Positions 8,980 to 58,212 of a stretch of DNA of 64,000 bases are shown piece by piece (the first letter of the stretch is position 1; every line of letters begins with the position of its first letter). A program made the translations under genes and the position numbers. The notes below the pieces were generated by a model. It ran no database searches, was not told the DNA's origin, and was given only the letters and a program-made list of their open reading frames with translations. The stretch lies in IMG/VR virus record IMGVR_UViG_3300028920_000022, positions 372,001-436,000 of that record; one strand, given 5' to 3'.

Positions 8980-9191
8980 AAACATTAACTGATTCTGAAG
9001 GAACTCTTTGGGAAATTGATCAGAAAGAGTTGACGGATCCTGAAGAAACTTGGTATTATTTGCGCAGGGCGGTAGATCGTCCAGAGTGGGCAGCGAGGAT
9101 TTCTAGCATTACCTTAAAACTTACAACGCGAGAGTCTATACATGTAGCTATAATAGAATGGTTTTTAGAAACTGTATCCAAGAAAATTTAG
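8973..9191 (+). CDS. Hypothetical protein
   Basis: ORF within the operon. Confidence 0.5.
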   Translation: MLETLTDSEGTLWEIDQKELTDPEETWYYLRRAVDRPEWAARISSITLKLTTRESIHVAIIEWFLETVSKKI

Positions 9192-9579: not shown

Positions 9580-10214
9580 ACAAAGTAACTACTAAAAAGA
9601 TTAGCACATATGAGTGTTTTGAAAAAACAATCAAACACCCCAAACATGGTACTATTATTTGTTCTGAAGGGTTTGTAAACGGCATAAAAACAGACCAAAG
9701 TTTTCGTTTAAAAAAGCCAAACCATGAAGGGTACGAGCCTGAAAGGATGACATTTATTTATTATGGTGGACCAATAGATACCCACAAAGTTAGCGAAACA
9801 CATTTTGATGATGATTGTAACTACGGTTTGACACAGGTTTTTGTTGAGGATTTAGAGAAGTTTTCAGATTTCAAAAACCTATATTGTCTCTGGATGAGCA
9901 TGGATAATAACATTTTTCGTTTAACTGATCCACGACCACTTCCTGTTGTAATGCGGTGTGAATTATGGCAAACCAAATATGATCTAGATGCCGCAGCTAA
10001 AAAACTTTCTTCTCGCAAAGACGTGAGGAATATTATACGTACCAACAACTGTGTACAGAATTGGGACATTTGCGGAAAACATAATTTGGTTTTTGATTAT
10101 TATTCTTCACAAAAAACTGTGTGTGATCTTAATGGTGTTATTTGTGAGCGCGACCGTATGATCGCAGACATAGTTGGTGTTGGAAAGTTTCGATATGAAG
10201 AAAAAGAAGACTAA
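9576..10214 (+). CDS. Hypothetical protein
   Basis: ATGA-coupled 212-aa ORF. Confidence 0.6.
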   Translation: MNKVTTKKISTYECFEKTIKHPKHGTIICSEGFVNGIKTDQSFRLKKPNHEGYEPERMTFIYYGGPIDTHKVSETHFDDDCNYGLTQVFVEDLEKFSDFKNLYCLWMSMDNNIFRLTDPRPLPVVMRCELWQTKYDLDAAAKKLSSRKDVRNIIRTNNCVQNWDICGKHNLVFDYYSSQKTVCDLNGVICERDRMIADIVGVGKFRYEEKED

Positions 10215-10628
10215 ACGTAGTAGCTCCTACGAAACACGCTTGTTAATATTCCCCAAACCAAAACGAAAACGCCCCATTAATCCTCCAGGTCCTGCGAGTG
10301 CATACGATTTAGCTACTAGACCAAAGTGGGATAATTGAAAGGGAAAACCCATATGACATTAAGACAATGGTTGGCTGGCAAATGGTTTCTATTATTGGGG
10401 CGTTGTCCTGCTTGCAAATCAAACCCTTTTGTAAAGAGATGTGGAATATGCGAAAAGAGTTTTCCATTATATGGATACCCTGTACAACAATATATATGGA
10501 GACAATATTCATGCTGGTTACAAAGCCATCAATACTATCTACTGTCTGTAAGAAAACAAACTGCGCATAAACGGTTTCAAGCTAAAGAATACGAAGAAAC
10601 ATATTCGTACAATTGAAAGAAAAAAGAT

Positions 10629-12098
10629 ATGCCCGCAAAAGTTCAAAAAACTCCTTTGCTTAAGGAAGGCGAATATACCATAGCCGATGTTTCAGATTGG
10701 AACTTTTTTGATCTTTCAGGCGAAAACGCCCACACTTTTGGCACGTCCAACAAACAATATCACATAGAAATGCACATAGGTAAAAATGGTAAGTGTCAGA
10801 TCTTTACCATGTTTGGTCCAACCGGGGGTACCCAAACTAAAAATTGGCGCTACTTTGACTCTGAAGTTGCCGCCCGTAAAGAATTGGCGTCAATGAAGAA
10901 AAAAAGAGTCAAAAAGAATTATAAAGAAATTAAAGTTGCCATTCGTGCTTACGGTACCGAAGAGGCTAAAAAGATCACTCAAGCTGTTGAGTTCAACAAC
11001 TCAGATATAAAACCCTCCAGCAATCTCCATAAAGAAACCCAACGATTAATGCGGGTTCTCTTTGGTGCAACCGAACACTTCGTTGTTACCACTTTGCGCT
11101 GCCCTCTGGGTCAATTAACCAATGAACAAGTAGATGAGGGTTATAAACGCCTAAATGAAGCAAAAAAATTAATTTCTAATGGTTCACCAAATGCTAAACG
11201 GATTGAAACACTTACCAACGAATTTTATGCTATTATCCCCCACAATTTAGGAGCCGGTGCGAGAGGTAAAATGATGAACCTCTTGCTGGATACTCCACAA
11301 AAGATTGCTCAAAAAGAATATGATTTAGAAACATTATTGGACGCCAAATCGGTTGGAGCTGCCCTGGAAAAGGGCTCAACCGTTGATGATCAATATAATG
11401 AATTGAATACCGATTTTGATTTTATTGATCATAACGATCCTTTATTTCAATGGGTAAATAGGATTGTTTTGGATACTCGGGCACACAACCATAATACTTT
11501 GGGTAAGATTACAGTATTGAATGCTTGGAAATATAATCGTCATGGCGAGAGAAACGTTTTTGAAAAGAGGATGAAAGAGATTGCCAAGGAGTGTAAAAAG
11601 CCGTTTACGCCTAAAGTTTTGAGGAATGCTGTTGAAAATCGGTTAGATATTCCAGATGGACAGGGAGGATTATATAAAAAGGCTAATGTGTTGCCATTAT
11701 TTCATGGAACCCGGACTCAGAACATTGCTGGAATTACGAAGAAGGGATTGTTGATAAGACCTTCGGGTGTGATTTTAGAAGGTTCATGCTACGGTAGTGG
11801 TGTTTATTATGCAAACAACAGTAGCAAAACGATCAACTATAGTAGTGTTCGGGGGGCTTATTATACCCACGGCAAAGACGATCGTGGTTATATATTCATA
11901 GTAGATTGCGTTCTAGGCGACACTTATGTTCCAACTACTGCAGCAAACTACACCAAGGGTAATATTTCCCCCAACCATTCAGTGTGGGCAAAGGGAGGAT
12001 ACTCTGGCGTAATTAATGATGAGTATGTGTTGTTGGACATAAATCAGCATAATATTAGATACTTAGTGGAGTTTACTTGCGGGAAAAATGGAATATAG
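10629..12098 (+). CDS. Poly(ADP-ribose) polymerase-like protein 1 (WGR + regulatory + catalytic domains)
   Basis: WGR-like N-terminus, CPLGQL, FYAIIPH regulatory domain, catalytic FHGT / YGSGVYYA / NDEYV (H-Y-E). Confidence 0.9.
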   Translation: MPAKVQKTPLLKEGEYTIADVSDWNFFDLSGENAHTFGTSNKQYHIEMHIGKNGKCQIFTMFGPTGGTQTKNWRYFDSEVAARKELASMKKKRVKKNYKEIKVAIRAYGTEEAKKITQAVEFNNSDIKPSSNLHKETQRLMRVLFGATEHFVVTTLRCPLGQLTNEQVDEGYKRLNEAKKLISNGSPNAKRIETLTNEFYAIIPHNLGAGARGKMMNLLLDTPQKIAQKEYDLETLLDAKSVGAALEKGSTVDDQYNELNTDFDFIDHNDPLFQWVNRIVLDTRAHNHNTLGKITVLNAWKYNRHGERNVFEKRMKEIAKECKKPFTPKVLRNAVENRLDIPDGQGGLYKKANVLPLFHGTRTQNIAGITKKGLLIRPSGVILEGSCYGSGVYYANNSSKTINYSSVRGAYYTHGKDDRGYIFIVDCVLGDTYVPTTAANYTKGNISPNHSVWAKGGYSGVINDEYVLLDINQHNIRYLVEFTCGKNGI

Positions 12099-19067: not shown

Positions 19068-19655
19068 ATGATTCATTATTATATAATTGACGTAGAAACG
19101 AATGGTCTAAAAGCTGGATATCATGAGGTAACACAGATTTCGATCATACGTTGTTCAGACAGAAACCAACTAAATAGATACATCAAACCTGAACATCCCA
19201 ATCGTACAACGCCAAAAGCATTAGAAGTGACGGGTAGAACTTACGCCGATCTTTCTAAAGGGGATGATAAAGAAACGGTTGTGGAGTTTTGTGATGCTTT
19301 TTTTCAAGAGGATTCAGCTACTCCAGAAGAACGATGTATTGTGGGGCATAATATCCACCGTTTTGATAAGAAGTTTTTGCATGCTTTGTGGAAATCGGTT
19401 GGTAAGAAATTTCCTGCCAATTTGTGGTTAGACACATTACCTTCCACCAAAAAGTTTGCTACCAACCAGGGAATATATTCGGAGAATTTTAAGTTAGATT
19501 CTTGTTTGAAAGTGTTTGGTGTCAAGCCCAGACCTGGCGGACACAATGCTGTGGTGGATACTCAAAACACGTATATTTTGCTCAAGAGATTAGAAAAGAG
19601 CGGAATAGACCTACTTCCGTTTACCCAAAGATCTGTACATATGGTCGATGCCTGA
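19068..19655 (+). CDS. DEDDh 3'-5' exonuclease, second paralog
   Basis: DVETNG, HNIHRFD, HNAVVD. Confidence 0.85.
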   Translation: MIHYYIIDVETNGLKAGYHEVTQISIIRCSDRNQLNRYIKPEHPNRTTPKALEVTGRTYADLSKGDDKETVVEFCDAFFQEDSATPEERCIVGHNIHRFDKKFLHALWKSVGKKFPANLWLDTLPSTKKFATNQGIYSENFKLDSCLKVFGVKPRPGGHNAVVDTQNTYILLKRLEKSGIDLLPFTQRSVHMVDA

Positions 19656-19875
19656 GGAAATCATGGGAAGCATAACTAAAAAAATACGCAAGAAGGCTGA
19701 AAAATATCAAAAAGCCCTAGAAATTGTTGAGAGCAGTTTAGATAACATAGAGATGCCTGAAAGTTTTGAAACGTATGATTTGGCTGATTCTGTTAAATCA
19801 GAAATTGAAAAAGCCAAAATCGATCGTCGTCAAGCAAGAAACAGGCGAAAGGCGGTGAAGCGTGGTCGTAGATAG
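19648..19875 (+). CDS. Small basic hypothetical protein
   Basis: Overlapping coupled ORF. Confidence 0.5.
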
Positions 19876-20410
19876 AACAAAGGGAGTTACTTTGTGGTTG
19901 ACCGGGTTATCTGGCGCAGGTAAAACTACTGTTGCCCAAGCGCTAGAAACTCGCTTGATTAATTATGATATCAATTGCTATCGGCTGGATGGTGACGAAC
20001 TACGTACAGGGCTGTGTTCTGGGCTGGGTTTTAGTAAAGAAGATCGCTCAGAAAATATAAGAAGAGTTGCGGAGGTTTCTAAATTATTCGCAAATGCAGG
20101 TTTAGTTTCTATAGTAAGTTTAATCAGTCCATATATTGAAGACAGGGACAATTGTCGAAAAATTCATGAAAACGCAAATTTACCATTTGTTGAGGTTTAT
20201 GTTGATGCCCCATTAAATGTATGCGAAAGTAGAGATCCGAAAGGATTATATAAAAAAGCCAGAGCTGGAGAAATAAAAAAGTTCACCGGAGTAAGTGATC
20301 CATACGAGGGACCATTGAATCCTGAAATAATATTACGAACAGCTGAAAATTCAATTAATGACTGTGTAGAATTATGTTTGAAATATTTGCAAGAAAATCG
20401 CTTGACATAG
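19862..20410 (+). CDS. cysC: Adenylyl-sulfate kinase
   Basis: [43 protein letters not shown]. Confidence 0.95.
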
Positions 20411-20430
20411 GCGGGTAGTTCGGCTATCGT
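20402..20430 (+). promoter_or_regulatory. Sigma70-type promoter of the Ro60/TROVE gene
   Basis: TTGACA-17-TATCGT, followed by a GGAGG RBS. Confidence 0.75.
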
Positions 20431-20447
20431 GGCGCGGAGGAAAAAAA

Positions 20448-22064
20448 ATGACTACATCATCTGATTTTGTGAAAAGTTTAATTGGGGACCAGGAAAAGGC
20501 AGAGGTTTTAGAGCCTTACCTGAAAAAGAACGAAGATTGGCGGTTCAGTGTTGCTCGTGTAATGCTAACCGGAATTCTCAAGAACCAGTTTTACCGATCC
20601 GCAGAAGATGCAGCCAAAGAAGCGTTGCCATTAATGCTTATGGCTGCAAAGAAGGATCCCGAATTCCTATTAAAGGCTGCCGCTTTTGCACGTGAAGCTA
20701 ATATGAAGGGAATGGTCAAACTGGGTCTGGCAGCTTTAGCAACTCAGGCTCCAGCCCAATTTTTAAATGATAATCGGGCTACTATTGTTGGTTTGTTAGG
20801 AACTTTTCACCCAGGACAATTACTTCAATTTGTTGAACTAATGAAGTCAAAAGTTTTGGGCAGGGGTTTTGGTGCCCGCTCTCAGAAATGGGTACAGTCT
20901 GTAATGCAGTCTTGGCGCCCAGAAAAGGTAGAAGAATATACCCTAAAATATCCAACTGCATACAAGGTTCTTCTGCGTCTTGTTCACCCATCATATAGTG
21001 ATGTGCGAAGTGGGTTGGTTCGATATTTATTGGACCCCTCAGAAAAATACCCAGAATATGGCACACCAGCGGGCAAGATTCAAAAAGCGGTTGAGCGCAT
21101 CAAAACCTCTAACGATGATGCGTATATTGCCAAAACCATGTTGGAATATGAAATTCCTTGGGATGTTGTCAAAGGATTCCATTCTATTAATGGAGATGTT
21201 GGTTTAGCAATGTTAACCCAGATGGGGCTTTCTGCTTTACTGTTAAACACACGCAGTTTAGAGAAAAATGGTGTTTTAAACACCCCGGATGGAGTCCAAG
21301 CGTTTGCTCTAAAGTTAAATGAGGTTAAAAACGGCAGATCTATTCCCATTGATTTTGCCAAACCATATATTTATTCTGAGAACCATCAGGTCAAGGAGTT
21401 ATTAGTAAAGGCGATTGTTGACACCTTGGGCAAAGAAATGCCTCATATTGAGGGAAGAAGCATTGGTGTCAGCGTTGATATTTCTGGTTCGATGAGCAAC
21501 GAACCATTACAAACTGCTGGGCTGTTAGCAATTCCATTTTTGAAAGCACGCAATTTGTGGTTTACCACGTTTGATACGCAGTGCTATGAAGAAGGAACCC
21601 AGGTACGCGGTCGAAGTTGGTATGGCGCTTTATCTGAGGGAAAATATATTTGTCCACCACTGAAGGGTTTGGAGCCGGAACAGCAGGTAAAGAATCTGTT
21701 AAGTTTGCGGGTAAATGGTGGAACTAATGTTTCTTCGTCTTTGGACAGAGCGTTGCAAAACAATATTAATTTGGATTTGCATGTTCTAATTACCGATGAG
21801 CAGCAAAATGCCGGAACTCCGTTGATGAGTGTTTGGCGTGAATATAAGCGTCGAATTAATCCACGAGCCGAGTTGTGGATAATCAATGCTACAAACTATG
21901 TGTGGCATTCTGCGGATTTCGATGATCCGAGCGTTACCGTTTATCAGACCATGACGCCTGCAATTTTTAAGAATCTACGATTTTTTGGTCAGGATTTAGT
22001 TTCTGCTATTAAATCGTATGATTTGAATAAGGTTCGTAGGTTGGGTAAGTTTAAGCCGGATTGA
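20448..22064 (+). CDS. Ro60/Rsr-like TROVE + vWA RNA-binding protein
   Basis: QFY and DPEFLLKAAAFARE N-terminal TROVE pattern, LLRLVHP, PWD, ALLLNTR; vWA MIDAS VDISGSM, GGTN, ITDEQ. Confidence 0.85.
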   Translation: MTTSSDFVKSLIGDQEKAEVLEPYLKKNEDWRFSVARVMLTGILKNQFYRSAEDAAKEALPLMLMAAKKDPEFLLKAAAFAREANMKGMVKLGLAALATQAPAQFLNDNRATIVGLLGTFHPGQLLQFVELMKSKVLGRGFGARSQKWVQSVMQSWRPEKVEEYTLKYPTAYKVLLRLVHPSYSDVRSGLVRYLLDPSEKYPEYGTPAGKIQKAVERIKTSNDDAYIAKTMLEYEIPWDVVKGFHSINGDVGLAMLTQMGLSALLLNTRSLEKNGVLNTPDGVQAFALKLNEVKNGRSIPIDFAKPYIYSENHQVKELLVKAIVDTLGKEMPHIEGRSIGVSVDISGSMSNEPLQTAGLLAIPFLKARNLWFTTFDTQCYEEGTQVRGRSWYGALSEGKYICPPLKGLEPEQQVKNLLSLRVNGGTNVSSSLDRALQNNINLDLHVLITDEQQNAGTPLMSVWREYKRRINPRAELWIINATNYVWHSADFDDPSVTVYQTMTPAIFKNLRFFGQDLVSAIKSYDLNKVRRLGKFKPD

Positions 22065-22065
22065 T

Positions 22066-22326
22066 GTGAAATATACACTTTTTATTCGCTACAGTGGTTG
22101 TGATATGGCATACGATCGTAAACTACAGAAAGTGGTTGGTCGTAAAGCCTGTAATACATCTTTCAATGGGCAGACTAACTGTAGCTTGCTTACTTTTGTT
22201 TTCAAGCAAAAATCTGCCTTGAAAATAGCTTTATCTAAGACAGCACGTTTGCGCAAACCGGGCATTGCTGTAAACGTTTGTGAAGAAACGGCTAATGGTT
22301 GTAGTTATAATTGTGAAAGCCTATGA
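22066..22326 (+). CDS. Hypothetical protein
   Basis: ORF after the TROVE gene. Confidence 0.5.
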   Translation: MKYTLFIRYSGCDMAYDRKLQKVVGRKACNTSFNGQTNCSLLTFVFKQKSALKIALSKTARLRKPGIAVNVCEETANGCSYNCESL

Positions 22327-22574
22327 GAGACTGGTCAAAACCTATTAGCAAGGGTAAGTTCTGCGATTACTGTCCATGTACTGCTTGTCAAACCGGCGAT
22401 GAAGAATGGGTCAGGACCGCAGGTAGAAATTACGAATGTGCGGATGGAACCCACATTTGCGGGGTTTGTCTTACCGAGGAACCATGCGGAGAAAACGGAT
22501 ATTTTTGTGATAGGTTTCCGTTATGCGAACACAAACCAAAACTAGCAGAATCTGAACTGAAAAAGTTTCGATAG
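22323..22574 (+). CDS. Cys-rich small protein
   Basis: Ten Cys, including CDYCPCTAC. Confidence 0.55.
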   Translation: MRDWSKPISKGKFCDYCPCTACQTGDEEWVRTAGRNYECADGTHICGVCLTEEPCGENGYFCDRFPLCEHKPKLAESELKKFR

Positions 22575-22592
22575 AAAACGTATTTTTATTTC

Positions 22593-22620
22593 GAAAGCCG
22601 GGGCTATGCTCCGGCTTTCT
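22593..22620 (+). terminator. Intrinsic terminator-like hairpin ending the TROVE operon
   Basis: GAAAGCCGGGGC-TAT-GCTCCGGCTTTC. Confidence 0.65.
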
Positions 22621-22640
22621 GCATATTATCGAATATTATT

Positions 22641-23144
22641 ATGGAACTTAAGAAAGCTGTATTTTTCGGCACCATATTACTAGTTGCATTATTTTGTTTA
22701 GACCTAATGATTAACATTAGTGCCTTGGCAATTTTATATATTTGTTTTATATTGTTTGCGTTATGGACAGATAATGAAAAATTTATATTTGGTACGTTAG
22801 TTATTAGTACGATATTAATAATGATAGCGTGGATATTTCACGGGGGTGGCACGGGATATGATAATGTCGCCAGATTGTTAGCGGGAGTAGTGATTTGGGT
22901 AACTGGGCTATTGTCAATTCAAAGAAAGCAGGTGGAAAACCGACTAAAGATGTTAAACGAAACATTAGAGCTTAGAGTAATGGCTAGAACCGCGGCATCA
23001 GAAGAAAAGTCTCGCCGATTAGAATTGCAGATTAAAGCCCTACAAGGTATTCGACATGCTGGGACAAAGAATTCATTATCTCAATTAGATGAAATTATCC
23101 ACAATTTGCAGGAAATTAGCAAACTTGAGGCTTTTGATGAGTAA
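22641..23144 (+). CDS. Membrane sensor-like protein (4 TM + signalling helix), no kinase domain
   Basis: Four hydrophobic segments followed by LNETLELRVMARTA. Confidence 0.6.
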   Translation: MELKKAVFFGTILLVALFCLDLMINISALAILYICFILFALWTDNEKFIFGTLVISTILIMIAWIFHGGGTGYDNVARLLAGVVIWVTGLLSIQRKQVENRLKMLNETLELRVMARTAASEEKSRRLELQIKALQGIRHAGTKNSLSQLDEIIHNLQEISKLEAFDE

Positions 23145-23544
23145 TAGTAGTACACCACCATATAGTAATGGAATTACTTTGAGATTTCTTGCTGATCAAT
23201 TTGCGCGCGGTTTTCAAGAATTACGTGATGCTGTAAATAATATACAAACCCAGGTTCAAGCTGGTGCTATAGATATGGCAGGAGTAAAAGCTGAGATATC
23301 TAACATGCAAGACAAAGTTGATGAATTACAGGTTTTAGTGCGTGGTTCTAATGATAGCTCGCTTACTTCAAAACTTCATACAATTGAAAAAGAATTGAAA
23401 CTTATTAATGAATGGGTAATCAATCAGAAAGCAATAAAATCTGAAAGTAGTAAAAATAAATTAGCTATCAAGGTTGCGGTAATAACTGGTAGTTTTGCTT
23501 TGTTGGCACAAATAGTAATGCAAATTATTCATTGGTTTAATTGA
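23137..23544 (+). CDS. Coiled-coil protein with C-terminal TM (holin/XhlA-like)
   Basis: Heptad-rich body and a C-terminal hydrophobic helix. Confidence 0.55.
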   Translation: MSNSSTPPYSNGITLRFLADQFARGFQELRDAVNNIQTQVQAGAIDMAGVKAEISNMQDKVDELQVLVRGSNDSSLTSKLHTIEKELKLINEWVINQKAIKSESSKNKLAIKVAVITGSFALLAQIVMQIIHWFN

Positions 23545-23603
23545 TTGGTGTTGTCGAGTGGCGTAAAAATGATTAACCATTAATAGTGGATGGGCGTTTT
23601 TCC

Positions 23604-23632
23604 TTGACATGGGAGCTTCGTTCGGCTAGCGT
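23604..23632 (+). promoter_or_regulatory. Sigma70-type promoter of the ncRNA locus
   Basis: TTGACA-17-TAGCGT; predicted +1 near 23639, which is the first base of hairpin 1. Confidence 0.7.
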
Positions 23633-23638
23633 AGGTGG

Positions 23639-23697
23639 TGTAACGCGAGGTTGATCTTTCATCTGCATTTTGTGGGTCTTCCGATTATTTCGTTACA
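23639..23697 (+). ncRNA. Y-RNA-like small RNA 1
   Basis: TGTAACG-C(bulge)-GA...TT-CGTTACA terminal stem, GATC/GGTC inner stem, TTTCATC loop, U-tract after. Confidence 0.65.
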
Positions 23698-23706
23698 TTT
23701 TCTTTT

Positions 23707-23782
23707 TGTGCATGGTGAGACTTGAACTTACAAATCCTCGGAAGATAGCGGTTTTTTAGACCGCCGTGTTTTCGCCATGTAC
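23707..23782 (-). pseudogene. Degenerate tRNA-Leu-type element with truncated D-arm (anticodon loop CTAAAAA)
   Basis: On -: GTACATG/CATGCAC-A acceptor, GCGGT/ACCGC anticodon stem, long variable arm, GTAAG-TTCAAGT-CTCAC T-arm. Confidence 0.55.
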
Positions 23783-23791
23783 ACATTTCCA

Positions 23792-23824
23792 AACACATGA
23801 TTTCTCAACACATGATTTCTCAAC
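23792..23824 (+). repeat. 15-bp tandem duplication AACACATGATTTCTC x2.2
   Basis: Read directly from the sequence. Confidence 0.9.
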
Positions 23825-23970
23825 TAAAACACTGGGGTTATTTTTCACTAGGAACAACGTTATTTTTGATACCATTTATTTTAATGCTAAGACCACCGTG
23901 GTATCTTAATGCGATGATGATGGTTGGTTTGGTAATGGTAATCCAAAGTACTAAGGTTGGAGAGAAGTAA
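23797..23970 (+). CDS. Small two-TM membrane protein (57 aa, not in the ORF track)
   Basis: MISQHMISQLKHWGYFSLGTTLFLIPFILMLRPPWYLNAMMMVGLVMVIQSTKVGEK*; no clear RBS. Confidence 0.4.
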   Translation: MISQHMISQLKHWGYFSLGTTLFLIPFILMLRPPWYLNAMMMVGLVMVIQSTKVGEK

Positions 23971-23999
23971 TTTCTACGCATATTTAGGATTCAGATTTG

Positions 24000-24060
24000 G
24001 GACGCGAGATTAGATCTTTCATCATTCATAGATATTTCGGGTCTAGTCGTTTTTTCGTCC
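24000..24060 (+). ncRNA. Y-RNA-like small RNA 2
   Basis: GGACG-C-GA...TT-CGTCC; 9-bp inner stem GATTAGATC/GGTCTAGTC; TTTCATC loop. Confidence 0.7.
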
Positions 24061-24065
24061 ATTTT

Positions 24066-24153
24066 GCGTTGTTCGTCTAAGTTAAGACATCCTTGTTAGA
24101 GCTTCTAAGCTATTACACAGGAAGATAGAGTATCGAATCTCTGCGACGCGCTA
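24066..24153 (+). ncRNA. tRNA-like element with expanded anticodon arm
   Basis: GCGTTGT/GCGACGC acceptor plus G-CTA end, GTCT/AGAC D-stem, TCCT...AGGA long arm, AGAG-TATCGAAT-CTCT T-like arm. Confidence 0.55.
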
Positions 24154-24154
24154 G

Positions 24155-24218
24155 GTAACGCGAAGTTAGATCTTTCATCATTTTCCAAGGTAAACGGGTC
24201 TAACTGTTTTTTCGTTAC
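24155..24218 (+). ncRNA. Y-RNA-like small RNA 3
   Basis: GTAACG-C-GA...TT-CGTTAC; inner stem AGTTAGATC/GGTCTAACT; TTTCATC loop. Confidence 0.7.
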
Positions 24219-24290
24219 ACTAATTTGACCCCTTTAAGACCATAAAAGGTTTGTTTTCGAAATACATTTAGACACAACATATCTTTTTAA

Positions 24291-24321
24291 AAGGCATGCC
24301 CTTTAAGGGTGTGCTTTTTTT
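24291..24321 (+). terminator. Intrinsic terminator after the ncRNA array
   Basis: GCATGCCC-TTTAA-GGGTGTGC followed by T7. Confidence 0.7.
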
Positions 24322-24325
24322 GTAT

Positions 24326-24411
24326 TGCGGGAATGTAGCAAAGGCGGCTAGCCAGTCTCATAAGCTGGCGTCCATTGATCGCGAAGGGTTCGATTCCCTC
24401 TCCCGCAACCA
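24326..24411 (+). tRNA. tRNA with CAT anticodon (Met or Ile2), encoded CCA, long variable region
   Basis: TGCGGGA/TCCCGCA-A-CCA; CCAGT-CTCATAA-GCTGG; GGTTCGATTCC. Confidence 0.85.
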
Positions 24412-24413
24412 GC

Positions 24414-24442
24414 TTGACATCGGGCATTATTTTTAGTATCAT
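24414..24442 (+). promoter_or_regulatory. Sigma70-type promoter of PARP 2
   Basis: TTGACA-17-TATCAT. Confidence 0.75.
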
Positions 24443-24468
24443 GGACCATCTTCTAAGGTGGTTATTTT

Positions 24469-25875
24469 ATGGGAAAATTGAAGGTGTGGAAAGTTGGCGC
24501 AGCTGGAGAACCCAGTTTTCCTGCCAATTTTGAGGTGGCTAAAAAAGCCGTTCTCCAAGTTACAGATATTAAAACAAATCGTAATAAGTATTATGCCATA
24601 GAACTACACTCTGCTGGCAATAAATATAGAGTGTTTACTCATTATGGTCGAACAGATGATCTGGACACGAATCCTAATGCTGGGGTGCGCGAGGTTCGTT
24701 ACGGCAACTTGTCTGAATGTGAAGCAACCTATCATCAGATATATAGTCAAAAAACTAGCGCAAGAAAAGGATATAAGGAACTTAGCTTAGCATCTTCGCG
24801 TATTGGTTCGTCTCAATCGGTTGGTAAATCTAGCGGACATGTTGATGACAAAACGCTTGAAAAACTAAACAACGGTAACAAGAAAGTGATAAAAAACAAA
24901 GTTTCTACACTTTCTCCCGTTGTACAAGATTTTGTTTCTTATATTTATGCTGAAGCCACTAATGCCCTAACTAGCACAATTAATGCCAGCATTACCGCTA
25001 ATGGTATCGAAACGCCTCTTGGTGTTTTGACACTGGGTCAGATTGATAAGGGGCAAAAGATTTTGGATGAGCTTTATGATTTATTCAATTCAAAAAAGAG
25101 CCAATCAATACGTGACCATATGGTAGAACTGAGTGGTGAGTTTTATACAGTAATTCCTCACAGAATAGGCAGAACTAGGGCTGCTGTAGAAGCTGCTGTT
25201 ATTGATAGTTTAGTAGATTTTAATGCTAAGCAAGACACATTACAACTTATGCGAGACATGTTAAGTGTTTCGGGTAAAGACTCCCAGGTACTTATTAACC
25301 CTGAAATTGATAAGAAATATAATGCTTTGGGTTGCGAAATTAAAACTGTAGATAATAAAAAGTATCAAGAATTGAAGGATTATGTAGAGAAATCACAAAT
25401 AAAAACCAGAAATATTAAAGTAAAGAATATATATTCATTATGCAGACCAGAAGAACAAAAGGTTTTTGCTGATAATATTTCAAATAAACGATTACTTTTT
25501 CACGGTTCTAGGGCAAAAAACTGGGTAGGTATTCTTTCCCGTGGTTTGTTGCTTCCTAAGATTGTGGTTAGCTTGGGTGTAAACCGAACTGACGCAGGTT
25601 GGCTTGGAAATGGTATTTATTTCGGAGATGCTGTTTGCACTACATTATACTACACGTCTCCTGGAAGGCAGAGAAACACCCGGATGATGGCGATAGCGAA
25701 TGTAGCATTAGGAAAGATGAAGGATTTTAATAGAATTACGTATGGATTAAAAGGACCACCCGCTGGATATCATAGTTGTCATGGTGTACGTGGAACCTCA
25801 TTTGCAGATGATGAATATGTAATTTATGACCAGAAACAGCAGAAACTTGAGTATTTAGTGGAGTATGTGTCATGA
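24469..25875 (+). CDS. Poly(ADP-ribose) polymerase-like protein 2 (WGR + regulatory + catalytic domains)
   Basis: NRNKYY...YGR WGR domain, TPLGVL, FYTVIPH, LFHGSR / LGNGIYF / DDEYVIY. Confidence 0.92.
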   Translation: MGKLKVWKVGAAGEPSFPANFEVAKKAVLQVTDIKTNRNKYYAIELHSAGNKYRVFTHYGRTDDLDTNPNAGVREVRYGNLSECEATYHQIYSQKTSARKGYKELSLASSRIGSSQSVGKSSGHVDDKTLEKLNNGNKKVIKNKVSTLSPVVQDFVSYIYAEATNALTSTINASITANGIETPLGVLTLGQIDKGQKILDELYDLFNSKKSQSIRDHMVELSGEFYTVIPHRIGRTRAAVEAAVIDSLVDFNAKQDTLQLMRDMLSVSGKDSQVLINPEIDKKYNALGCEIKTVDNKKYQELKDYVEKSQIKTRNIKVKNIYSLCRPEEQKVFADNISNKRLLFHGSRAKNWVGILSRGLLLPKIVVSLGVNRTDAGWLGNGIYFGDAVCTTLYYTSPGRQRNTRMMAIANVALGKMKDFNRITYGLKGPPAGYHSCHGVRGTSFADDEYVIYDQKQQKLEYLVEYVS

Positions 25876-28863: not shown

Positions 28864-30006
28864 ATGATTAAATCTATGTTTGATGATGATCTTTACAAGT
28901 TCACAATGCAACAGATTATTTTGCATTTCTATGGAGACAAGAAAGCCGAATATAGATTTAAAAATCGTGGGAACACCAAGTTTAATGACAAGTTTGCTGA
29001 TAGACTTCAGGATGAGATAGAGAACCTTTCTCTGTTGGTTCCCGACAAATATGAACTAGAAGAGTTTGCGAAGATTCCGTTTATTAGAGGAGATTATGTA
29101 GAGTACTTATCAAGGTATCGTTATGATCCACGGCAGGTACAGTTTTCTTTGCGAGATGGAGATTTAGATCTTCGTATAAAGGGTCCATGGCATTCCGCTA
29201 TATTGTGGGAAGTCAAACTGATGGCGCTAATTAGTGAGATTTATTTTGCCCAACATAAAGCTACCTGGACAATGGATGGTCAAAAAGAAAAGCTTGATCG
29301 AAAAGCTCTTCTTTTAGAGGCGGTAGATGCTAAGTATGCCGATTTTGGTACTCGTCGCAGGCGTAGTTTTGAGGTTCAAGATTTGGTGGTAAGAAACCTT
29401 GTCAACAAACATGGGTTCCTGGGTACATCAAATGTACATTTAGCCATTAAACATGGTGTTTCCGCCGTGGGCACTATGGCTCACGAATGGGTTCAGGGTG
29501 TATCGGTAGCTGAGGATTTATTGCATGCTAATGGTATTATGATGGACAGATGGAATTCTTTTTATCAGGGACAGTTGGGTGTTGCTTTAACTGATACATT
29601 TACCACTCCGCACTTTTTATACAACAGTTTTGATGCCAAGCGCGCTGCTGCATTTTCTGGAGTTAGACAAGATTCGGGCGATCCGTTTTGGTTTGCGAAT
29701 CAGGTGATAAATCGATACCTACAACTAGGAATTAACCCCAAAACCAAAACCATTATTTTTAGCGATAGTTTAGATGCCAAAACTGCCGCCAAACTACAGA
29801 TCCATTGTGATGGAAAGATTAACTGTGCTTTTGGCATTGGCACCAATCTAACTAATGATTTTGACAATTTGAAACCAATTAATATGGTGATCAAGTTGTG
29901 GTCAATTGACGGAATTCCGGTAGTAAAGTTGTCAGATAATGCTGGCAAAAACAATGGCGATCTATGGATGCTTGGGGTTGCGAAGAGGGTGTTTGGGGTA
30001 TCATGA
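28864..30006 (+). CDS. pncB: Nicotinate phosphoribosyltransferase
   Basis: DDDLYKFTMQQ, DFGTRRR, GTSN, GTMAHEW, RQDSGDP, FGIGT, VKLSD. Confidence 0.93.
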   Translation: MIKSMFDDDLYKFTMQQIILHFYGDKKAEYRFKNRGNTKFNDKFADRLQDEIENLSLLVPDKYELEEFAKIPFIRGDYVEYLSRYRYDPRQVQFSLRDGDLDLRIKGPWHSAILWEVKLMALISEIYFAQHKATWTMDGQKEKLDRKALLLEAVDAKYADFGTRRRRSFEVQDLVVRNLVNKHGFLGTSNVHLAIKHGVSAVGTMAHEWVQGVSVAEDLLHANGIMMDRWNSFYQGQLGVALTDTFTTPHFLYNSFDAKRAAAFSGVRQDSGDPFWFANQVINRYLQLGINPKTKTIIFSDSLDAKTAAKLQIHCDGKINCAFGIGTNLTNDFDNLKPINMVIKLWSIDGIPVVKLSDNAGKNNGDLWMLGVAKRVFGVS

Positions 30007-31033: not shown

Positions 31034-32050
31034 ATGTCAAAGCGAAATCTGGTTAAGTCTCGTGTTCGTGGAGCTATTTTGGGAACCGCAATTGGAGACG
31101 CCCTAGGTGCTCCATTTGAAATGATGGAAAAAGAACAAATACATAACCTATTGCCGGTTCCGTGGACATGGGGACAACAGCAGAAGGGTATAGTGTTTTC
31201 CGAAAACTTTGCTCATCCAAATCTAGGAATCGGTCAATGGACCGATGATACTCAATTAATGCGCACTATTTTGTGGTCGATTATTGACGATCATGCCATT
31301 GATCCATATGGTATTGCTAAATATACCAGTGAGGTTTTTGAGAAAGAACAGCTTCGAGGATGGAGCAAATCCGTAATTTCTGCAGCAAAACGACTTTCTC
31401 GTGGGGTTCCGTGGTACGATTCTGCCAACGAATCCATCGGTATTGGCAACGGTATCGCCATGAAAGCTGCTCCTTTGGGTATTTACCTGGCTAAATACCT
31501 GAAAAACGATTACAACTATTCTACCCATGAGTTTGGCGCCAACCTTAGACATGCCATTGTGTCTATTGTTGGTGTAGGACAAATTACCCACCATGAGCTG
31601 GGAATCATGGGTGGCGTAATGCAAAGTGTCTTAGTTGGTCTTTCGTTCAATAATGTCAAGAACAAGAAGTTGATTCTTAAGGTTCTGGGCAATATTGAAA
31701 AGGAATTTTCTGGTGCCACACGGTTTACAGATAAGCTAAGAATTGCGCTAAAATACAATAGTATTGCGGATGTGGCTGATAATATTGGAACAGACAGCAA
31801 GGCAGACAAATCCTGGGTAACTGCAGCTGCTGTTTTTCTCAACACCAAGAGGCGCAGTGATGCTGCAAAACGCATGATGGAGCTAATCTGCCAGGGCGGC
31901 GATTGTGATACTACCGGAGCAATGTTCGGAGCCTTAGCTGGAGCCCGTTGGGGAATTTCTGCTTTTCCCACGAATCTCAGGAAAGAAGTCGAGGCAAGCA
32001 AGGAACTGTTAAAGTTAGCAGATGGTTTGTATGGAGTGGTTTCTACTTGA
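31034..32050 (+). CDS. ADP-ribosylglycohydrolase (DraG/ARH family)
   Basis: GTAIGDALGAPFE, WTDDT, GNGIAMK, ITH, GGDCDTTGAMFGALAGA. Confidence 0.92.
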   Translation: MSKRNLVKSRVRGAILGTAIGDALGAPFEMMEKEQIHNLLPVPWTWGQQQKGIVFSENFAHPNLGIGQWTDDTQLMRTILWSIIDDHAIDPYGIAKYTSEVFEKEQLRGWSKSVISAAKRLSRGVPWYDSANESIGIGNGIAMKAAPLGIYLAKYLKNDYNYSTHEFGANLRHAIVSIVGVGQITHHELGIMGGVMQSVLVGLSFNNVKNKKLILKVLGNIEKEFSGATRFTDKLRIALKYNSIADVADNIGTDSKADKSWVTAAAVFLNTKRRSDAAKRMMELICQGGDCDTTGAMFGALAGARWGISAFPTNLRKEVEASKELLKLADGLYGVVST

Positions 32051-57162: not shown

Positions 57163-58212
57163 TTATACCTCAAACAACGGACATGTTCTACAAGAAAACG
57201 AATTGCTTTCCCTGGTTTTTAATAAACTATTACGGAATGCAACCATTCTTTCGTGGTTCCACACATCTTCAATAAATGAATTGCAGGAGACTACGTCCAT
57301 TCCCCGCGCCCACTCTACACAACCCTCGGCAAAAGAGCAAGGAAAAGCTTCACCCTTCCAGTTGATAAATATGGAAAACAATGAACTCTCGCAAGGCTCC
57401 ACATACTCAGCTATCTTGTCAAAATCTTTATGGTTTTTAATTGTGTTCAAGAATTTGAAAGCGGAACAACTATCGAAACCAAGCCCAACATTATTTGAAG
57501 TAGCTTGGTAAACCAAGTAAGCAAACTTGTTTTGTGACAGTTTGTGATAATGTTTCCCTCGCCCCTTTTGCTTTAAAGATAGCATAACAATAGCTTTTAC
57601 AGGATCCAAACGAGAATCTTTTACCTTGTCTCTAATGGTTTCCCGAGTAAGATTAAATGTTTCCTCACTGATCATACAATGAATGTTAATTTGTTGCAAC
57701 CCATGTTTGTGCAATTTTTGAATAGAATCGTAGCAAATATTTTTATTTTCGTAACGGCTGACAGCAACAGCCCCACAAACTTCTGCTAGTTTTGCTGCAG
57801 TTTCGTCTGAAATATCGGCAACGGTGATGTTTGGTATAACCCCATTGTTTCGACAATACCACATCATATCGAAAAGTTCGGGGTTTGATGTGGCATTACT
57901 ATCCGCACCAAAAGCAATTTGCGTTAGTATTCGGTTTTCTGTAATTTTGTCGAAAACTTTTTTAAAGGTATCCAGGGACATGTTGTTGCCAACCGGAGTA
58001 TTAGATTTGTAGCAATGTTTACAAACCTTTCCACCTACACCTTTACATATGGTGGTTACTTCGATGTCAGCAATCTCGGGAGACGGCGACATCTCCGGGT
58101 CTTCTTTTTTAGAGCTGCCCCAACGAATAAAATATCCAGAACCTTTATGGAACCGGTAATTATAATTAGGAGAGCGAACTGTTTTATGGTGTTTGCTTTC
58201 AGTAATTTTCAT
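57163..58212 (-). CDS. Radical SAM protein with SPASM/Twitch domain
   Basis: CKGVGGKVCKHC (CX7CX2C), PNIT, C-terminal PCES...PCSF...CRTCP. Confidence 0.85.
   Translation of the reverse strand: MKITESKHHKTVRSPNYNYRFHKGSGYFIRWGSSKKEDPEMSPSPEIADIEVTTICKGVGGKVCKHCYKSNTPVGNNMSLDTFKKVFDKITENRILTQIAFGADSNATSNPELFDMMWYCRNNGVIPNITVADISDETAAKLAEVCGAVAVSRYENKNICYDSIQKLHKHGLQQINIHCMISEETFNLTRETIRDKVKDSRLDPVKAIVMLSLKQKGRGKHYHKLSQNKFAYLVYQATSNNVGLGFDSCSAFKFLNTIKNHKDFDKIAEYVEPCESSLFSIFINWKGEAFPCSFAEGCVEWARGMDVVSCNSFIEDVWNHERMVAFRNSLLKTRESNSFSCRTCPLFEV

What the first reader, a model, noticed from the sequence alone, without database searches (positions are those of the whole stretch)
20402..24321. Phage Ro60/TROVE with an unannotated array of three minimal Y-RNA-like RNAs
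Seen: the gap 23545-24468, empty in the ORF track, holds three ~60-nt elements (23639, 24000, 24155) with consensus stem-ACG-C-GA-stem-GATC-TTTCATC-variable-GGGTC-stem-U-rich-TT-CGT-stem. Both helices covary: GGACG/CGTCC versus GTAACG/CGTTAC, and GATTAGATC/GGTCTAGTC versus AGTTAGATC/GGTCTAACT. The locus has a promoter at its start and a terminator at its end, and lies ~1.6 kb from a TROVE-vWA gene. Established: Ro60 binds Y RNAs at a terminal helix with a bulged C followed by GA paired to UU (GGUC-C-GA/UU-GACC), the same architecture as here, and bacterial Y RNAs lie near rsr. Inference: a new compact Y RNA class without the fused tRNA module of YrlA. It has an invariant UUUCAUC loop motif plus a variable 11-17-nt segment that may recruit different effectors or targets.
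Basis: partly seen in the sequence, partly recalled or inferred. Interest (0 to 1): 0.9.

Follow-up and report, generated by a model that had tools for sequence, protein, structure and literature searches.

The report
Megaphage Ro60 with mini Y RNAs
Three ~60-nt structured RNAs next to a giant phage's Ro60 gene are real and are short members of a large, uncatalogued family of Y-RNA-like RNAs that related giant phages carry in a dozen or more copies, many of them wedged directly between tRNA genes.

Summary
The window, part of a 458-kb uncultured phage contig, has exactly three copies of a ~60-65-nt two-helix element (54-63 bits; next best hit 11.6 bits). They lie 1.6 kb downstream of a true but divergent Ro60 gene, on the same strand.

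The element is a family. About 75 copies occur in 14 phage contigs. 13 of those contigs carry the same Ro60 clade. In 13 of 15 clade loci with enough flank, an array sits within 3 kb downstream on the Ro60 strand. Both helices covary strongly. The stem junction (AACG, bulged C, G, opposite UUU-CGUU) and a UUCAUC loop motif are near-invariant.

Relatives also hold long forms with a T-arm, acceptor-like stem and D-arm. Three of these hit Rfam YrlA below threshold (31-38 bits; cut-off 69). Many copies abut tRNAs within a few bases. A DEDD 3'-5' exonuclease gene always precedes Ro60.

The window copies match no Rfam family.

Best reading: short Y RNAs, co-transcribed with tRNA-like spacers and bound by the phage Ro60. 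Expression and binding are untested.

This is a new variant of a known kind, not a separate tRNA-less class. GATC and GGGTC belong to helix 2, and GA/UU pairing is a minority state.

The parts
19068..19655 (+). DEDD-type 3'-5' exonuclease (Pfam RNase_T family), conserved neighbour just upstream of Ro60
   Evidence: Pfam RNase_T at 1.3e-17. NCBIfam gives DEDD/DnaQ-type exonuclease hits. tblastn finds it within 0.2-1.7 kb upstream of Ro60 (about 2.8 kb in L019) in 10 of 10 clade loci that have upstream flank, at 35-80% identity.
20448..22064 (+). Divergent Ro60/Rsr protein: HEAT-repeat (TROVE-like) ring plus vWA domain with MIDAS motif
   Evidence: phmmer to PDB 2nvo at 1e-9. Family profile to 2nvo at 2e-19, to 1yvp at 3e-14, and to phage phiLo Ro60 at 9e-6. 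AF2 model with pLDDT 82; top 13 Foldseek PDB hits are all Ro60/Rsr. NCBIfam Rsr at 1.5e-10 but far below its cut-off. Pfam finds only vWA_Ro60, below threshold.
23604..23632 (+). Promoter-like element for the RNA array: TTGACA at 23604-23609, 17-nt spacer, TAGCGT at 23627-23632
   Evidence: Missed by the consensus scan. CTTGACA-N17-TAnnGT is conserved 6-7 nt before the first element in the window, L014 and L016, while flanking sequence diverges. The PARP gene promoters have the same layout.
23637..23699 (+). Y-RNA-like element 1: helix 1 of 9 bp, bulged C at 23646, UUUCAUC at 23657-23663; helix 2 weakened by two U-U mismatches
   Evidence: CM 54.4 bits, E 5e-12. Fold z-score -2.0.
23706..23785 (.). 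Stable structured spacer of unresolved nature: 12-bp stem with a three-way junction
   Evidence: Fold z-score -3.95, with 0 of 200 shuffles folding as well. Weak tRNA-like score on the minus strand only: Rfam 20.9 bits against cut-off 29, and ARAGORN only at a relaxed threshold.
23999..24061 (+). Y-RNA-like element 2: helix 1 GGACG/CGUCC, bulged C at 24005, helix 2 of 9-10 bp
   Evidence: CM 55.2 bits, E 3e-12. Fold z-score -2.7.
24066..24150 (+). tRNA-like spacer: 7-bp acceptor-like stem, D-arm-like and T-arm-like hairpins, over-long 'anticodon' arm. It lies 3-5 nt from the Y-like elements on each side
   Evidence: Cloverleaf-like MFE fold. Not called by ARAGORN or Rfam. Positional equivalents are in L014 at 10000-10072 (Rfam tRNA 23.7 bits) and in L016 at about 8998-9073. 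Genuine tRNAs occupy the same position in relatives.
24154..24219 (+). Y-RNA-like element 3: helix 1 GUAACG/CGUUAC, bulged C at 24161, CGAA at 24161-24164, UUCAUC at 24174-24179, helix 2 of 9-10 bp
   Evidence: CM 63.5 bits, E 2e-14. Fold z-score -2.8.
24289..24319 (+). Intrinsic terminator closing the array
   Evidence: 14-bp stem followed by a T run. Hairpin plus T-run at the same position in L014 and L016.
24326..24411 (+). 86-nt tRNA-like gene with CAU anticodon and a long variable arm, located after the terminator
   Evidence: ARAGORN calls tRNA-Met(cat). In Rfam only tRNA-Sec at 26.8 bits, below threshold. The homologue in L014 at 10218-10305 scores 42.8 bits on the Rfam tRNA model.
24469..25875 (+). 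WGR-PARP_reg-PARP catalytic protein with its own promoter at 24414-24442. It follows the array only in the closest relatives
   Evidence: Pfam PARP 1e-30, PARP_reg 3e-17, WGR 1e-8. Promoter matches 11 of 12 positions. Orthologues follow the array in L014 and L016.

Best explanation
The three elements are short Y RNAs. They are the compact members of a previously unmodelled YrlA/YrlB-like family that belongs to a clade of uncultured giant phages with a divergent Ro60.

Proposed mechanism:
1. The array is transcribed from its own sigma-70-like promoter as one precursor. The order is Y1, structured spacer, Y2, tRNA-like spacer, Y3, terminator.
2. The tRNA-like spacer serves as punctuation, as genuine tRNAs do in relatives. 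RNase P cleavage at its 5' end sets the 3' end of the upstream Y RNA and leaves a short U-rich tail. tRNA 3'-end processing sets the 5' end of the downstream Y RNA.
3. Each mature RNA binds the phage Ro60 through the near-invariant junction of the terminal helix: AACG, bulged C, G, opposite UUU-CGUU.
4. The distal part tethers the RNP to a partner or gates access to the Ro60 cavity. That part is helix 2, the UUCAUC motif and a variable loop, or a tRNA-like module in the long paralogues. The most likely partner is a 3'-5' exoribonuclease: the adjacent phage DEDD exonuclease or host PNPase.

Shown here: existence, family, covariation, linkage to the Ro60 clade, abutment to tRNAs, remote YrlA similarity of the long forms, and the Ro60 fold.

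Inferred: transcription, processing sites, Ro60 binding and function.
For: Specificity:
- Only three hits in 64 kb, then background.
- 36 hits in the first 28 sources, all on the Ro60 strand and downstream of the gene. 73 hits in 550 kb overall.

Structure (73 sequences):
- 89.1% of cells are paired, against 68.8% after shuffling.
- The covariation score is 0.513, against 0.154 after shuffling.
- With slid partners, at most 50.5% of cells are paired.
- 5 of 7 helix-1 pairs and 9 of 9 helix-2 pairs show changes on both sides.
- In my anchored analysis, helix 2 has 7 or more contiguous pairs in 92% of elements, against 14% for mismatched partners.

Conserved positions: A5, C6, G7, C8, UUCAUC and U226-U228 with C229, G230, U231 are invariant or nearly so, and G9 is conserved in 65 of 71, while the outer stem varies freely. 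This is the pattern expected of a protein-recognition site.

Forward linkage: 13 of 15 clade loci with downstream flank have an array starting 0.05-2.8 kb after Ro60 on the same strand.

Reverse linkage: three IMG/VR pattern scans gave 134 matching stretches, of which the roughly 115 listed were fetched and re-scored. After CM filtering, every hit of 35 bits or more lies in six contigs. Five of them carry the Ro60-clade gene. The sixth comes from the same sample as a Ro60 contig that lacks local copies. There is no match in one genome from each of 185,579 bacterial and archaeal species.

Link to known Y RNAs:
- Long paralogues have the T-arm, acceptor-like stem and D-arm in that order.
- They hit Rfam YrlA at 37.8, 33.1 and 31.3 bits. 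The first two alignments span the full model.
- Classical YrlA-type RNAs beside distant phage Ro60 genes share the same layout: stem, C-G-N, helix 2, conserved loop start, U-rich strand, stem.
- Published work reports bacterial Y RNAs within 4 kb of Ro60 on the same strand. It also reports short hairpin Y RNAs with pyrimidine-rich loops, and a Yrn2-tRNA-Yrn1 polycistron (PMC4201824). Phage Ro60 binds phage Y-like RNAs and forms complexes with host PNPase (PMC12135203).

Processing: 37 of 49 relatives' elements have a tRNA within 12 nt. The gap from a tRNA 3' end to the next element is -1 to 3 nt in 26 cases. The gap from an element to the next tRNA 5' end is 2-11 nt in 25 cases. Many elements start right after CCA, CTA or CAA, and their tails are U-rich.

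The protein is a true Ro60. A DEDD exonuclease gene precedes it in 10 of 10 loci.
Against: - There are no expression data and no binding data of any kind.
- The window copies do not match Rfam YrlA or Y_RNA even at E<=10.
- The junction sequence (ACG-C-G) differs from both published Ro60-site motifs, GGUCCGA and GNCGAA.
- The GA/UU pairing that most resembles vertebrate Y RNAs is present in only 15 of 71 members.
- Half of the family copies in relatives lie 30-45 kb from Ro60 inside tRNA arrays. A role tied to tRNA biogenesis rather than to Ro60 is therefore not excluded.
- Two clade loci, L008 and L025, have no copy within the flank held.
- The models were seeded from Ro60-adjacent copies.
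- YrlA hits to the long forms are well below the gathering score of 69.
Confidence: 0.75

Rival explanations
1. The elements are tRNA-array punctuation or processing modules with no Ro60 role. On this view they are structured spacers that guide or insulate RNase P, RNase Z or exonuclease processing of polycistronic tRNA transcripts, or they are substrates of the adjacent DEDD exonuclease. They would sit near Ro60 only because the whole region is an RNA-metabolism island.
For: In relatives most copies sit inside tRNA arrays with 0-11 nt gaps to tRNAs. A tRNA-like spacer sits between window copies 2 and 3. A DEDD exonuclease gene is conserved nearby, and a CCA-adding-family gene is nearby in close relatives.
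Against: Simple spacers would not need an invariant bulged junction plus an invariant UUCAUC motif across about 75 paralogues. The Ro60-adjacent arrays in the window, L014, L016 and L018 contain no or few genuine tRNAs to process. The family is confined to genomes with this Ro60 clade. Long forms resemble YrlA, a proven Ro60 ligand. Tested Y RNAs are also co-transcribed with tRNAs (PMC4201824), so this arrangement does not argue against a Y RNA identity.
Confidence: 0.1
2. The elements are tRNA-mimic decoys or anti-defence RNAs. They, especially the long tRNA-like forms, would soak up host tRNA-targeting nucleases or other tRNA-binding defence proteins, with or without Ro60.
For: The long forms have a tRNA-like modular design, and whole cloverleaves are embedded in the stem in L007 11217-11322 and L040 2210-2323. 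They are co-located with large phage tRNA sets. The neighbourhood is rich in conflict-type genes: two PARP-like genes, an ADP-ribosylglycohydrolase and NAD salvage.
Against: The three window copies have no tRNA-like part at all, yet they keep the invariant junction and loop motif. Nothing here ties the elements to a specific defence system.
Confidence: 0.08
3. The elements are cis-regulatory leader or attenuator structures for the downstream PARP gene, or selfish repeated elements or decayed tRNA pseudogenes without function.
For: The array lies directly upstream of a PARP gene in the window, L014 and L016. The copies are repeated.
Against: A strong terminator and a separate promoter lie between the array and the PARP gene. 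More distant loci keep the array but have other downstream genes. Compensatory changes in 14 of 16 pairs, together with invariant unpaired bases, show selection on an RNA structure rather than decay or transposition. No terminal inverted repeats or target duplications were seen.
Confidence: 0.04

Closest known systems
YrlA (Rfam RF02553): bacterial and phage Y RNA with a tRNA-like domain (Chen et al. 2014, PMC4201824)
   Same: Both are encoded near Ro60 on the same strand. Both have a terminal helix formed by the 5' and 3' ends, with a conserved C-G-(A/C) junction on the 5' strand and a U-rich 3' strand. Both have a second helix followed by a conserved loop-start motif. Long paralogues in related phages carry the T-arm, acceptor-like stem and D-arm in the YrlA order and give significant but sub-threshold RF02553 hits.
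   Different: The window copies lack the tRNA-like domain entirely and give no RF02553 hit. The junction reads AACG-C-G rather than GNCGAA. The loop-start motif is UUCAUC rather than YUAY. Copy number is far higher, at least 11-13 per genome in relatives. Copies are interleaved with tRNAs.
YrlB (Salmonella, M. smegmatis) and Yrn2 (D. radiodurans): short Ro60-bound Y RNAs
   Same: [quoted passage not shown] They are encoded beside a longer Y RNA and Ro60. Yrn2 is co-transcribed with a tRNA and Yrn1 (PMC4201824). This is the closest functional analogue of the three window copies.
   Different: There is no detectable sequence similarity, and no curated model exists to test against. Here the short and long forms clearly share one terminal module and one loop motif, so they are paralogues of a single family.
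Thermus phage phiLo Ro60 with Yrl1 and Yrl2 (PMC12135203; PDB 9KOP, 9L5Y)
   Same: A phage-encoded Ro60 with adjacent phage-encoded Y-like RNAs that have a 5'-3' stem and a CGAA-type motif. That Ro60 binds its RNAs and forms complexes with host PNPase. It aligns structurally with the window protein at TM 0.59-0.72.
   Different: The phiLo RNAs lie upstream of Ro60 and number two. The Ro60 proteins share only about 17% identity. No tRNA interleaving and no conserved exonuclease neighbour are described for phiLo.
Vertebrate Y RNAs (Rfam Y_RNA)
   Same: Both have a terminal bulged helix with an unpaired C followed by G(A) opposite U residues, a modular distal loop and a U-rich 3' tail.
   Different: There is no sequence or model match. 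The GA/UU step is not conserved in the family. The elements are about half the size.

Membership tests
Y RNA (functional class: Ro60-bound ncRNA) | Physically bound by Ro60 | not testable with these tools
   This needs RIP, EMSA or a solved structure. No expression or binding data are available.
Y RNA (bacterial/phage genomic criterion of Chen et al. 2014) | Encoded within about 4 kb of the Ro60 gene on the same strand | tested here: met
   The window array starts 1.57 kb after the Ro60 stop on the same strand. 13 of 15 clade loci with flank show the same arrangement.
Y RNA | Terminal helix from the 5' and 3' ends, carrying a conserved bulged protein-binding junction | tested here: met
   Helix 1 is 96% paired, with 5 of 7 pairs covarying. 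C8 is invariant and unpaired, and it is flanked by invariant C-G and G-C pairs. The sequence differs from GGUCCGA and GNCGAA.
YrlA (Rfam RF02553) | Covariance-model score at or above the gathering threshold of 69 bits | tested here: not met
   No hit for the window copies even at E<=10. Long paralogues in relatives score 31-38 bits. A classical phage YrlA in L012 scores 45 bits.
YrlA | Internal tRNA-like domain: T-arm, acceptor-like stem, D-arm | tested here: not met
   The window copies have only an 11-17-nt loop. The domain is present in long paralogues of the same family in L040, L048 and L055.
YrlA/YrlB | 5' motif GNCGAAN0-1G | tested here: inconclusive
   The window copies read CGCGAG, CGCGAG and CGCGAAG, which matches the CGA(A) core only. 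The family majority reads CGCGC.
YrlB/Yrn2-type short Y RNA | [quoted passage not shown] | tested here: met
   The fold has two stacked helices, and the loop begins UUUCAUC. No curated model exists, so homology itself cannot be tested.
Ro60/Rsr protein | HEAT-repeat ring plus C-terminal vWA domain with MIDAS motif | tested here: met
   The family profile matches Rsr at 2e-19 over residues 32-487. The AF2 model's top 13 hits are all Ro60/Rsr, with TM up to 0.75. D344, S346 and S348 are invariant.
Ro60/Rsr protein | Curated family thresholds (Pfam TROVE, NCBIfam Rsr) | tested here: not met
   There is no Pfam TROVE hit. vWA_Ro60 scores 18.7 bits against a cut-off of 27.7. NCBIfam Rsr scores 40 bits against a cut-off of 900. 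This is a divergent clade, not a standard orthologue.
tRNA (spacer at 24066-24150) | Detected by tRNA models, with a 7-nt anticodon loop | tested here: not met
   It is not called by ARAGORN even at a relaxed threshold or by Rfam at E<=10. The cloverleaf-like fold has an over-long anticodon arm. It is tRNA-like only.

The most novel reading that the evidence does not exclude
A lineage of giant phages has expanded Y RNAs into a combinatorial set of a dozen or more paralogues. All share one Ro60-docking stem but carry different distal modules: a bare loop, a T-arm, a permuted tRNA-like domain, or a whole cloverleaf. They are co-transcribed and co-processed with the phage's own tRNAs. They would retarget a phage Ro60 plus DEDD-exonuclease particle to different RNA substrates during infection, for example to destroy host structured RNAs or to check and rescue phage tRNAs attacked by host nucleases. 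That would be a phage-borne, RNA-adaptor-guided RNA surveillance machine.
Probability: 0.25. Interest if true: 0.85.

Novelty: new variant of a known kind. Interest (0 to 1): 0.66.

Why it matters
Y RNAs are understood functionally in only a handful of organisms, and what their variable modules do remains an open question. This family offers a natural series: one constant docking stem joined to graded distal modules, from a 60-nt mini form to a full tRNA mimic, all in single genomes. It comes with a dedicated Ro60 and a conserved exonuclease gene. Three things become directly testable:
- which nucleotides Ro60 reads;
- what the distal modules recruit;
- how Y RNAs arise from tRNAs.

It also shows that the tRNA arrays of giant phages hold many unannotated non-tRNA genes, and that current Rfam models miss them. 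The practical output is a covariance model that can annotate these RNAs in metagenomic phage genomes.

Tried and rejected
It found only the window's own contig plus one hit inside a high-GC coding region (L002). That hit is chance.
- **Nucleotide search of cultured phages.** No match. A protein search found only actinophage Ro-like proteins at 23-26% identity, so there is no cultured relative and no host assignment.
- **Genome-contig scans.** There was no Ro60-clade relative and no RNA pattern match.
- **Borderline CM hits L034, L044 and L039/L052 (21-32 bits).** These are pattern matches without a helix 2 and are treated as chance.
- **MAFFT alignment of the elements.** It mis-registered the 3' strand of helix 2, giving only 65% pairing. 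This was fixed by CM realignment and by an anchored analysis.
- **Rfam YrlA alignment to a long form.** It does not reliably place the terminal module, where posterior probabilities are low. It cannot settle which bases correspond to GNCGAA.
- **Search for a Ro60 gene on contig 3300035208_002255.** This contig holds many copies. Close-relative peptide patterns found nothing, so the question is unresolved. It may be a second fragment of the genome that carries L008.
- **Two pattern scans for long forms on the window's own contig.** Neither listed it, but one search listed only about 80 of its 98 matching stretches. A remote array there is neither shown nor excluded.
- **57-aa ORF at 23797-23970 and small ORFs overlapping 24287-24533.** They have no family hits and no relatives and are not treated as genes.

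Full report
**Where the window comes from.** The window is part of IMG/VR contig IMGVR_UViG_3300028920_000022 (JGI Ga0272441_10000008), which is 458,729 bp long. The locus studied lies at roughly 386-400 kb of that contig. No cultured phage has similar DNA. The nearest cultured Ro-like proteins are only 23-26% identical.

**The observation.** Reading 23400-24600 and aligning the three copies confirms three elements of about 60-65 nt at 23637-23699, 23999-24061 and 24154-24219, all on the + strand.
- Each folds as two stacked helices. Fold z-scores are -2.0 to -2.8.
- A covariance model built from relatives and run over the whole window with filters off gives 63.5, 55.2 and 54.4 bits for the three. 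The next hit scores 11.6 bits.
- A fourth exact GATCTTTCATC at 60782 lies within a 1727-aa ORF, lacks the flanking motifs, and is a chance match.
- The terminator at 24289-24319 is real.
- The array promoter was not called by the scan. However, CTTGACA-N17-TAnnGT lies 6-7 nt before the first element in the window and in two relatives whose flanks have diverged. The PARP gene promoters have the same layout.

**The protein.** ORF 20448-22064 (538 aa) is a divergent but genuine Ro60.
- A single-sequence search hits D. radiodurans Rsr at 1e-9.
- A 27-member family profile hits Rsr at 2e-19 over the full length, Xenopus and human Ro60 at about 1e-14, and phage phiLo Ro60 at 9e-6.
- The AlphaFold model has pLDDT 82 and pTM 0.73. 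Its top 13 PDB matches are all Ro60/Rsr structures, with TM 0.58-0.75.
- The DxSxS MIDAS residues are invariant across the family.
- Curated thresholds are not reached: there is no Pfam TROVE hit, vWA_Ro60 is below threshold, and NCBIfam Rsr scores 40 bits against a cut-off of 900.
- The clade has about 93 members at 42-81% identity. Many lie on contigs of 100-455 kb.

**The elements form a family linked to this Ro60 clade.** Loci around clade members were fetched from IMG/VR and JGI metagenomes.
- A regex screen and then model R1 found 36 elements in 28 sources. All are on the Ro60 strand and downstream of the gene.
- None was found in a chance-match control locus. None was found in four loci with a distant Ro60 clade, even with filters off.
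- 13 of 15 clade loci with usable downstream flank have an array that starts 0.05-2.8 kb after Ro60. L008 and L025 have none in the flank held.
- With model R2, 73 hits were collected from 550 kb, and four more came later.

**Structure and conservation.** Counts on the 73-sequence alignment:

| Measure | Observed | Control |
|---|---|---|
| Cells forming a standard pair | 89.1% | 68.8% after shuffling |
| Covariation score | 0.513 | 0.154 after shuffling |
| Cells paired with partners slid by 1-3 columns | - | at most 50.5% |
| Helix-1 pairs with changes on both sides | 5 of 7 | - |
| Helix-2 pairs with changes on both sides | 9 of 9 | - |

- An anchored analysis that does not depend on the alignment gives helix 2 a mean of 8.0 contiguous pairs. 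92% of elements have 7 or more, against 14% when 5' strands are paired with the 3' regions of other elements.
- Column tallies show an invariant core: A-A-C-G, an unpaired C, then G (65 of 71; A in 5, which still pairs with U).
- The following base is variable: C in 43, A in 15, U in 11.
- UUCAUC follows directly after helix 2 in 69-70 of 71 elements.
- U-U-U-C-G-U on the 3' side is also invariant.
The GA/UU step is a minority state, although all three window copies have it.

**Reverse test.** Three degenerate DNA-pattern scans of IMG/VR gave 23, 13 and 98 matching stretches. The last listing was cut at about 80, so roughly 115 stretches were fetched and re-scored with the model.
- Every hit of 35 bits or more falls in six contigs.
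- Five of the six carry the Ro60-clade gene.
- The sixth, 3300035208_002255, comes from the same sample as the Ro60 contig that lacks local copies (L008). A search for a Ro60 gene on it found none.
- 71 of the 73 newly fetched loci from the last scan gave no hit at all.
- One genome from each of 185,579 bacterial and archaeal species holds neither the protein clade nor the commonest RNA pattern.

**What relatives add.**
- **Short and long members share one family.** The same terminal module encloses an 11-30-nt loop, a T-arm-like hairpin, a T-arm/acceptor-like stem/D-arm domain, or a whole cloverleaf.
- **Location by length.** 28 of 36 Ro60-adjacent copies are 95 nt or shorter. Only 6 of 35 copies in remote arrays are that short.
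- **Link to YrlA.** Rfam YrlA (RF02553, gathering score 69) hits three long members at 37.8, 33.1 and 31.3 bits. The first two alignments span the whole model. A classical phage YrlA beside a distant Ro60 scores 45.3 bits. The window copies and the Ro60-adjacent long forms of L005 and L007 give no hit.
- **Same layout in classical YrlA-type RNAs.** Those in L011 and L012 show stem, C-G-N, helix 2, conserved loop start, U-rich strand, stem.
- **Remote arrays interleaved with tRNAs.** Four large contigs hold further arrays. Where the Ro60 position is known they lie 30-45 kb from it. In them the elements alternate with genuine tRNAs.
  - 37 of 49 elements have a tRNA within 12 nt.
  - The gap from a tRNA 3' end to the next element is -1 to 3 nt in 26 cases.
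  - The gap from an element to the next tRNA 5' end is 2-11 nt in 25 cases.
  - Many elements begin immediately after CCA, CTA or CAA, and their tails are U-rich.
- **The window's spacer fits the same slot.** A cloverleaf-like but non-decoding tRNA-like spacer at 24066-24150 sits 3-5 nt from copies 2 and 3. It has positional equivalents in L014 and L016.
- **Conserved neighbour.** A DEDD 3'-5' exonuclease gene (window 19068-19655) precedes Ro60 in 10 of 10 clade loci with upstream flank.
- **PARP gene.** It follows the array only in the closest relatives.

**Interpretation.** Published work shows the following.
- Bacterial Y RNAs lie within 4 kb of Ro60 on the same strand.
- Each studied species has one tRNA-like Y RNA and at least one short hairpin Y RNA with a pyrimidine-rich loop.
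- Yrn2, a tRNA and Yrn1 form one precursor.
- RNase P can cut a YrlA.
- Ro60 with a Y RNA works with 3'-5' exoribonucleases (PMC4201824).
- A phage Ro60 binds phage Y-like RNAs and forms complexes with host PNPase (PMC12135203).
- Jumbo phages were noted to carry TROVE proteins (PMC7824862).

Against that background, the three window elements are best read as short Y RNAs of a divergent, phage-specific YrlA/YrlB-like family.
- They would be made from one promoter-to-terminator unit.
- They would be released by tRNA-processing enzymes acting on the tRNA-like spacer.
- They would dock on Ro60 through the invariant bulged junction.
- The UUCAUC motif is conserved in short and long forms alike, so it is more likely a protein contact than part of the tRNA mimic. 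What it contacts is unknown.
- All steps from transcription onward are inference.

**Rivals.**
- A pure tRNA-processing spacer role is not excluded, but it does not explain the invariant junction and loop, or the restriction to Ro60-clade genomes.
- A tRNA-decoy role fits the long forms but not the three window copies.
- A cis-regulatory role for the PARP gene is contradicted by the intervening terminator and promoter, and by loci that lack a PARP gene.
- Decay products or selfish repeats are contradicted by the compensatory changes.

**Novelty.** Phage Ro60 with Y-like RNAs is known. So are short Y RNAs without a tRNA module, and so is co-transcription with tRNAs. Four things are new relative to Rfam 15 and to the papers I could search:
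- this sequence family;
- its very high copy number, at least 11-13 per genome in the stretches fetched;
- its graded series of distal modules on one docking stem;
- its tight interleaving with tRNAs and its conserved exonuclease neighbour.

I rate it a new variant of a known kind.

**Limits.**
- There is no expression or binding evidence.
- Only fragments of the large contigs could be read, so copy numbers are minima.
- Absence of Ro60 from a contig cannot be proven.
- Model E-values are rough.
- The models were seeded from Ro60-adjacent copies. The pattern-based reverse scans offset this only in part.

Noticed in passing
L040 1-2800, L048 1-1200 and 7300-8210, L055, L056, L058, L059, L103 (minus strand of each): Related giant phages have arrays in which Y-like elements alternate with genuine tRNAs, with gaps of only 0-11 nt. 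Where the Ro60 position is known, these arrays lie 30-45 kb from it. Standard tRNA annotation would leave these 60-200-nt gaps blank.
   Followed up: yes
L007 11217-11322 (+); L040 2210-2323 (-): A complete cloverleaf is embedded inside the Y-type terminal stem. ARAGORN calls it a tRNA, and in L040 the Rfam tRNA model gives 47.7 bits. In L040 the UUUCAUC motif appears to form the 5' strand of the acceptor-like stem.
   Followed up: partly
window 24326-24411 (+); L014 10218-10308: An 86-91-nt tRNA-like gene has a CAU anticodon and a long variable arm. It sits after the array terminator and is conserved in the closest relative, where the Rfam tRNA model gives 42.8 bits. A class-II-shaped CAU tRNA is unusual, and its identity (Met or Ile2) is unknown.
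   Followed up: partly
window 23706-23785: A very stable structured element lies 7 nt after copy 1 (z-score -3.95). It scores weakly as a tRNA on the opposite strand only. It is absent from L014 and L016, and its nature is unresolved.
   Followed up: partly
window 23794-23823 and 23797-23970: A 15-nt perfect tandem duplication (cacatgatttctcaa, two copies) overlaps the start of a 57-aa hydrophobic ORF. The ORF has no relatives. The whole 23700-23975 stretch looks like an insertion relative to L014 and L016.
   Followed up: no
window 23978-23998; L014 9748-9768; L016 8901-8921: A conserved 21-nt A/T-rich block (gcatatttaRgattYagattt) lies immediately upstream of the GGACG-type element in all three loci. 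It may be an internal promoter or a processing site. No tRNA precedes this copy.
   Followed up: no
window 10629-12098, 24469-25875, 28864-30006, 31034-32050: The window holds an NAD/ADP-ribose gene set: two PARP-like genes (the second also with a WGR domain), a nicotinate phosphoribosyltransferase and an ADP-ribosylglycohydrolase.
   Followed up: partly
window 19862-20410: A full-length adenylyl-sulfate (APS) kinase gene (NCBIfam 8.6e-73) is inserted between the 75-aa gene and Ro60. It is absent from this position in all relatives examined.
   Followed up: partly
window 55612-56805 (+): A TnpB / IS605 OrfB-type gene with HTH, OrfB_IS605 and Cas12f-like TNB domains lies inside the phage genome. 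No flanking guide RNA was looked for.
   Followed up: no
L011 5425-5800; L012 5638-5850: Phages with a distant Ro60 clade (25-28% identity) carry classical YrlA-type RNAs, both short and long, just upstream of Ro60. In L012 a long one matches Rfam YrlA at 45 bits.
   Followed up: partly
L068-L071 2048-3727 (minus strand), close relative of the window locus: A 559-aa PolyA_pol-family gene (CCA-adding enzyme or poly(A) polymerase type) lies about 1.3 kb upstream of the exonuclease-Ro60 pair in the closest relatives. No counterpart was looked for in the window.
   Followed up: no
window 58209-63392 (-): A 1727-aa ORF whose only domain hits are HEAT and LRV repeats. It is the largest gene in the window, and its function is unknown.
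   Followed up: no
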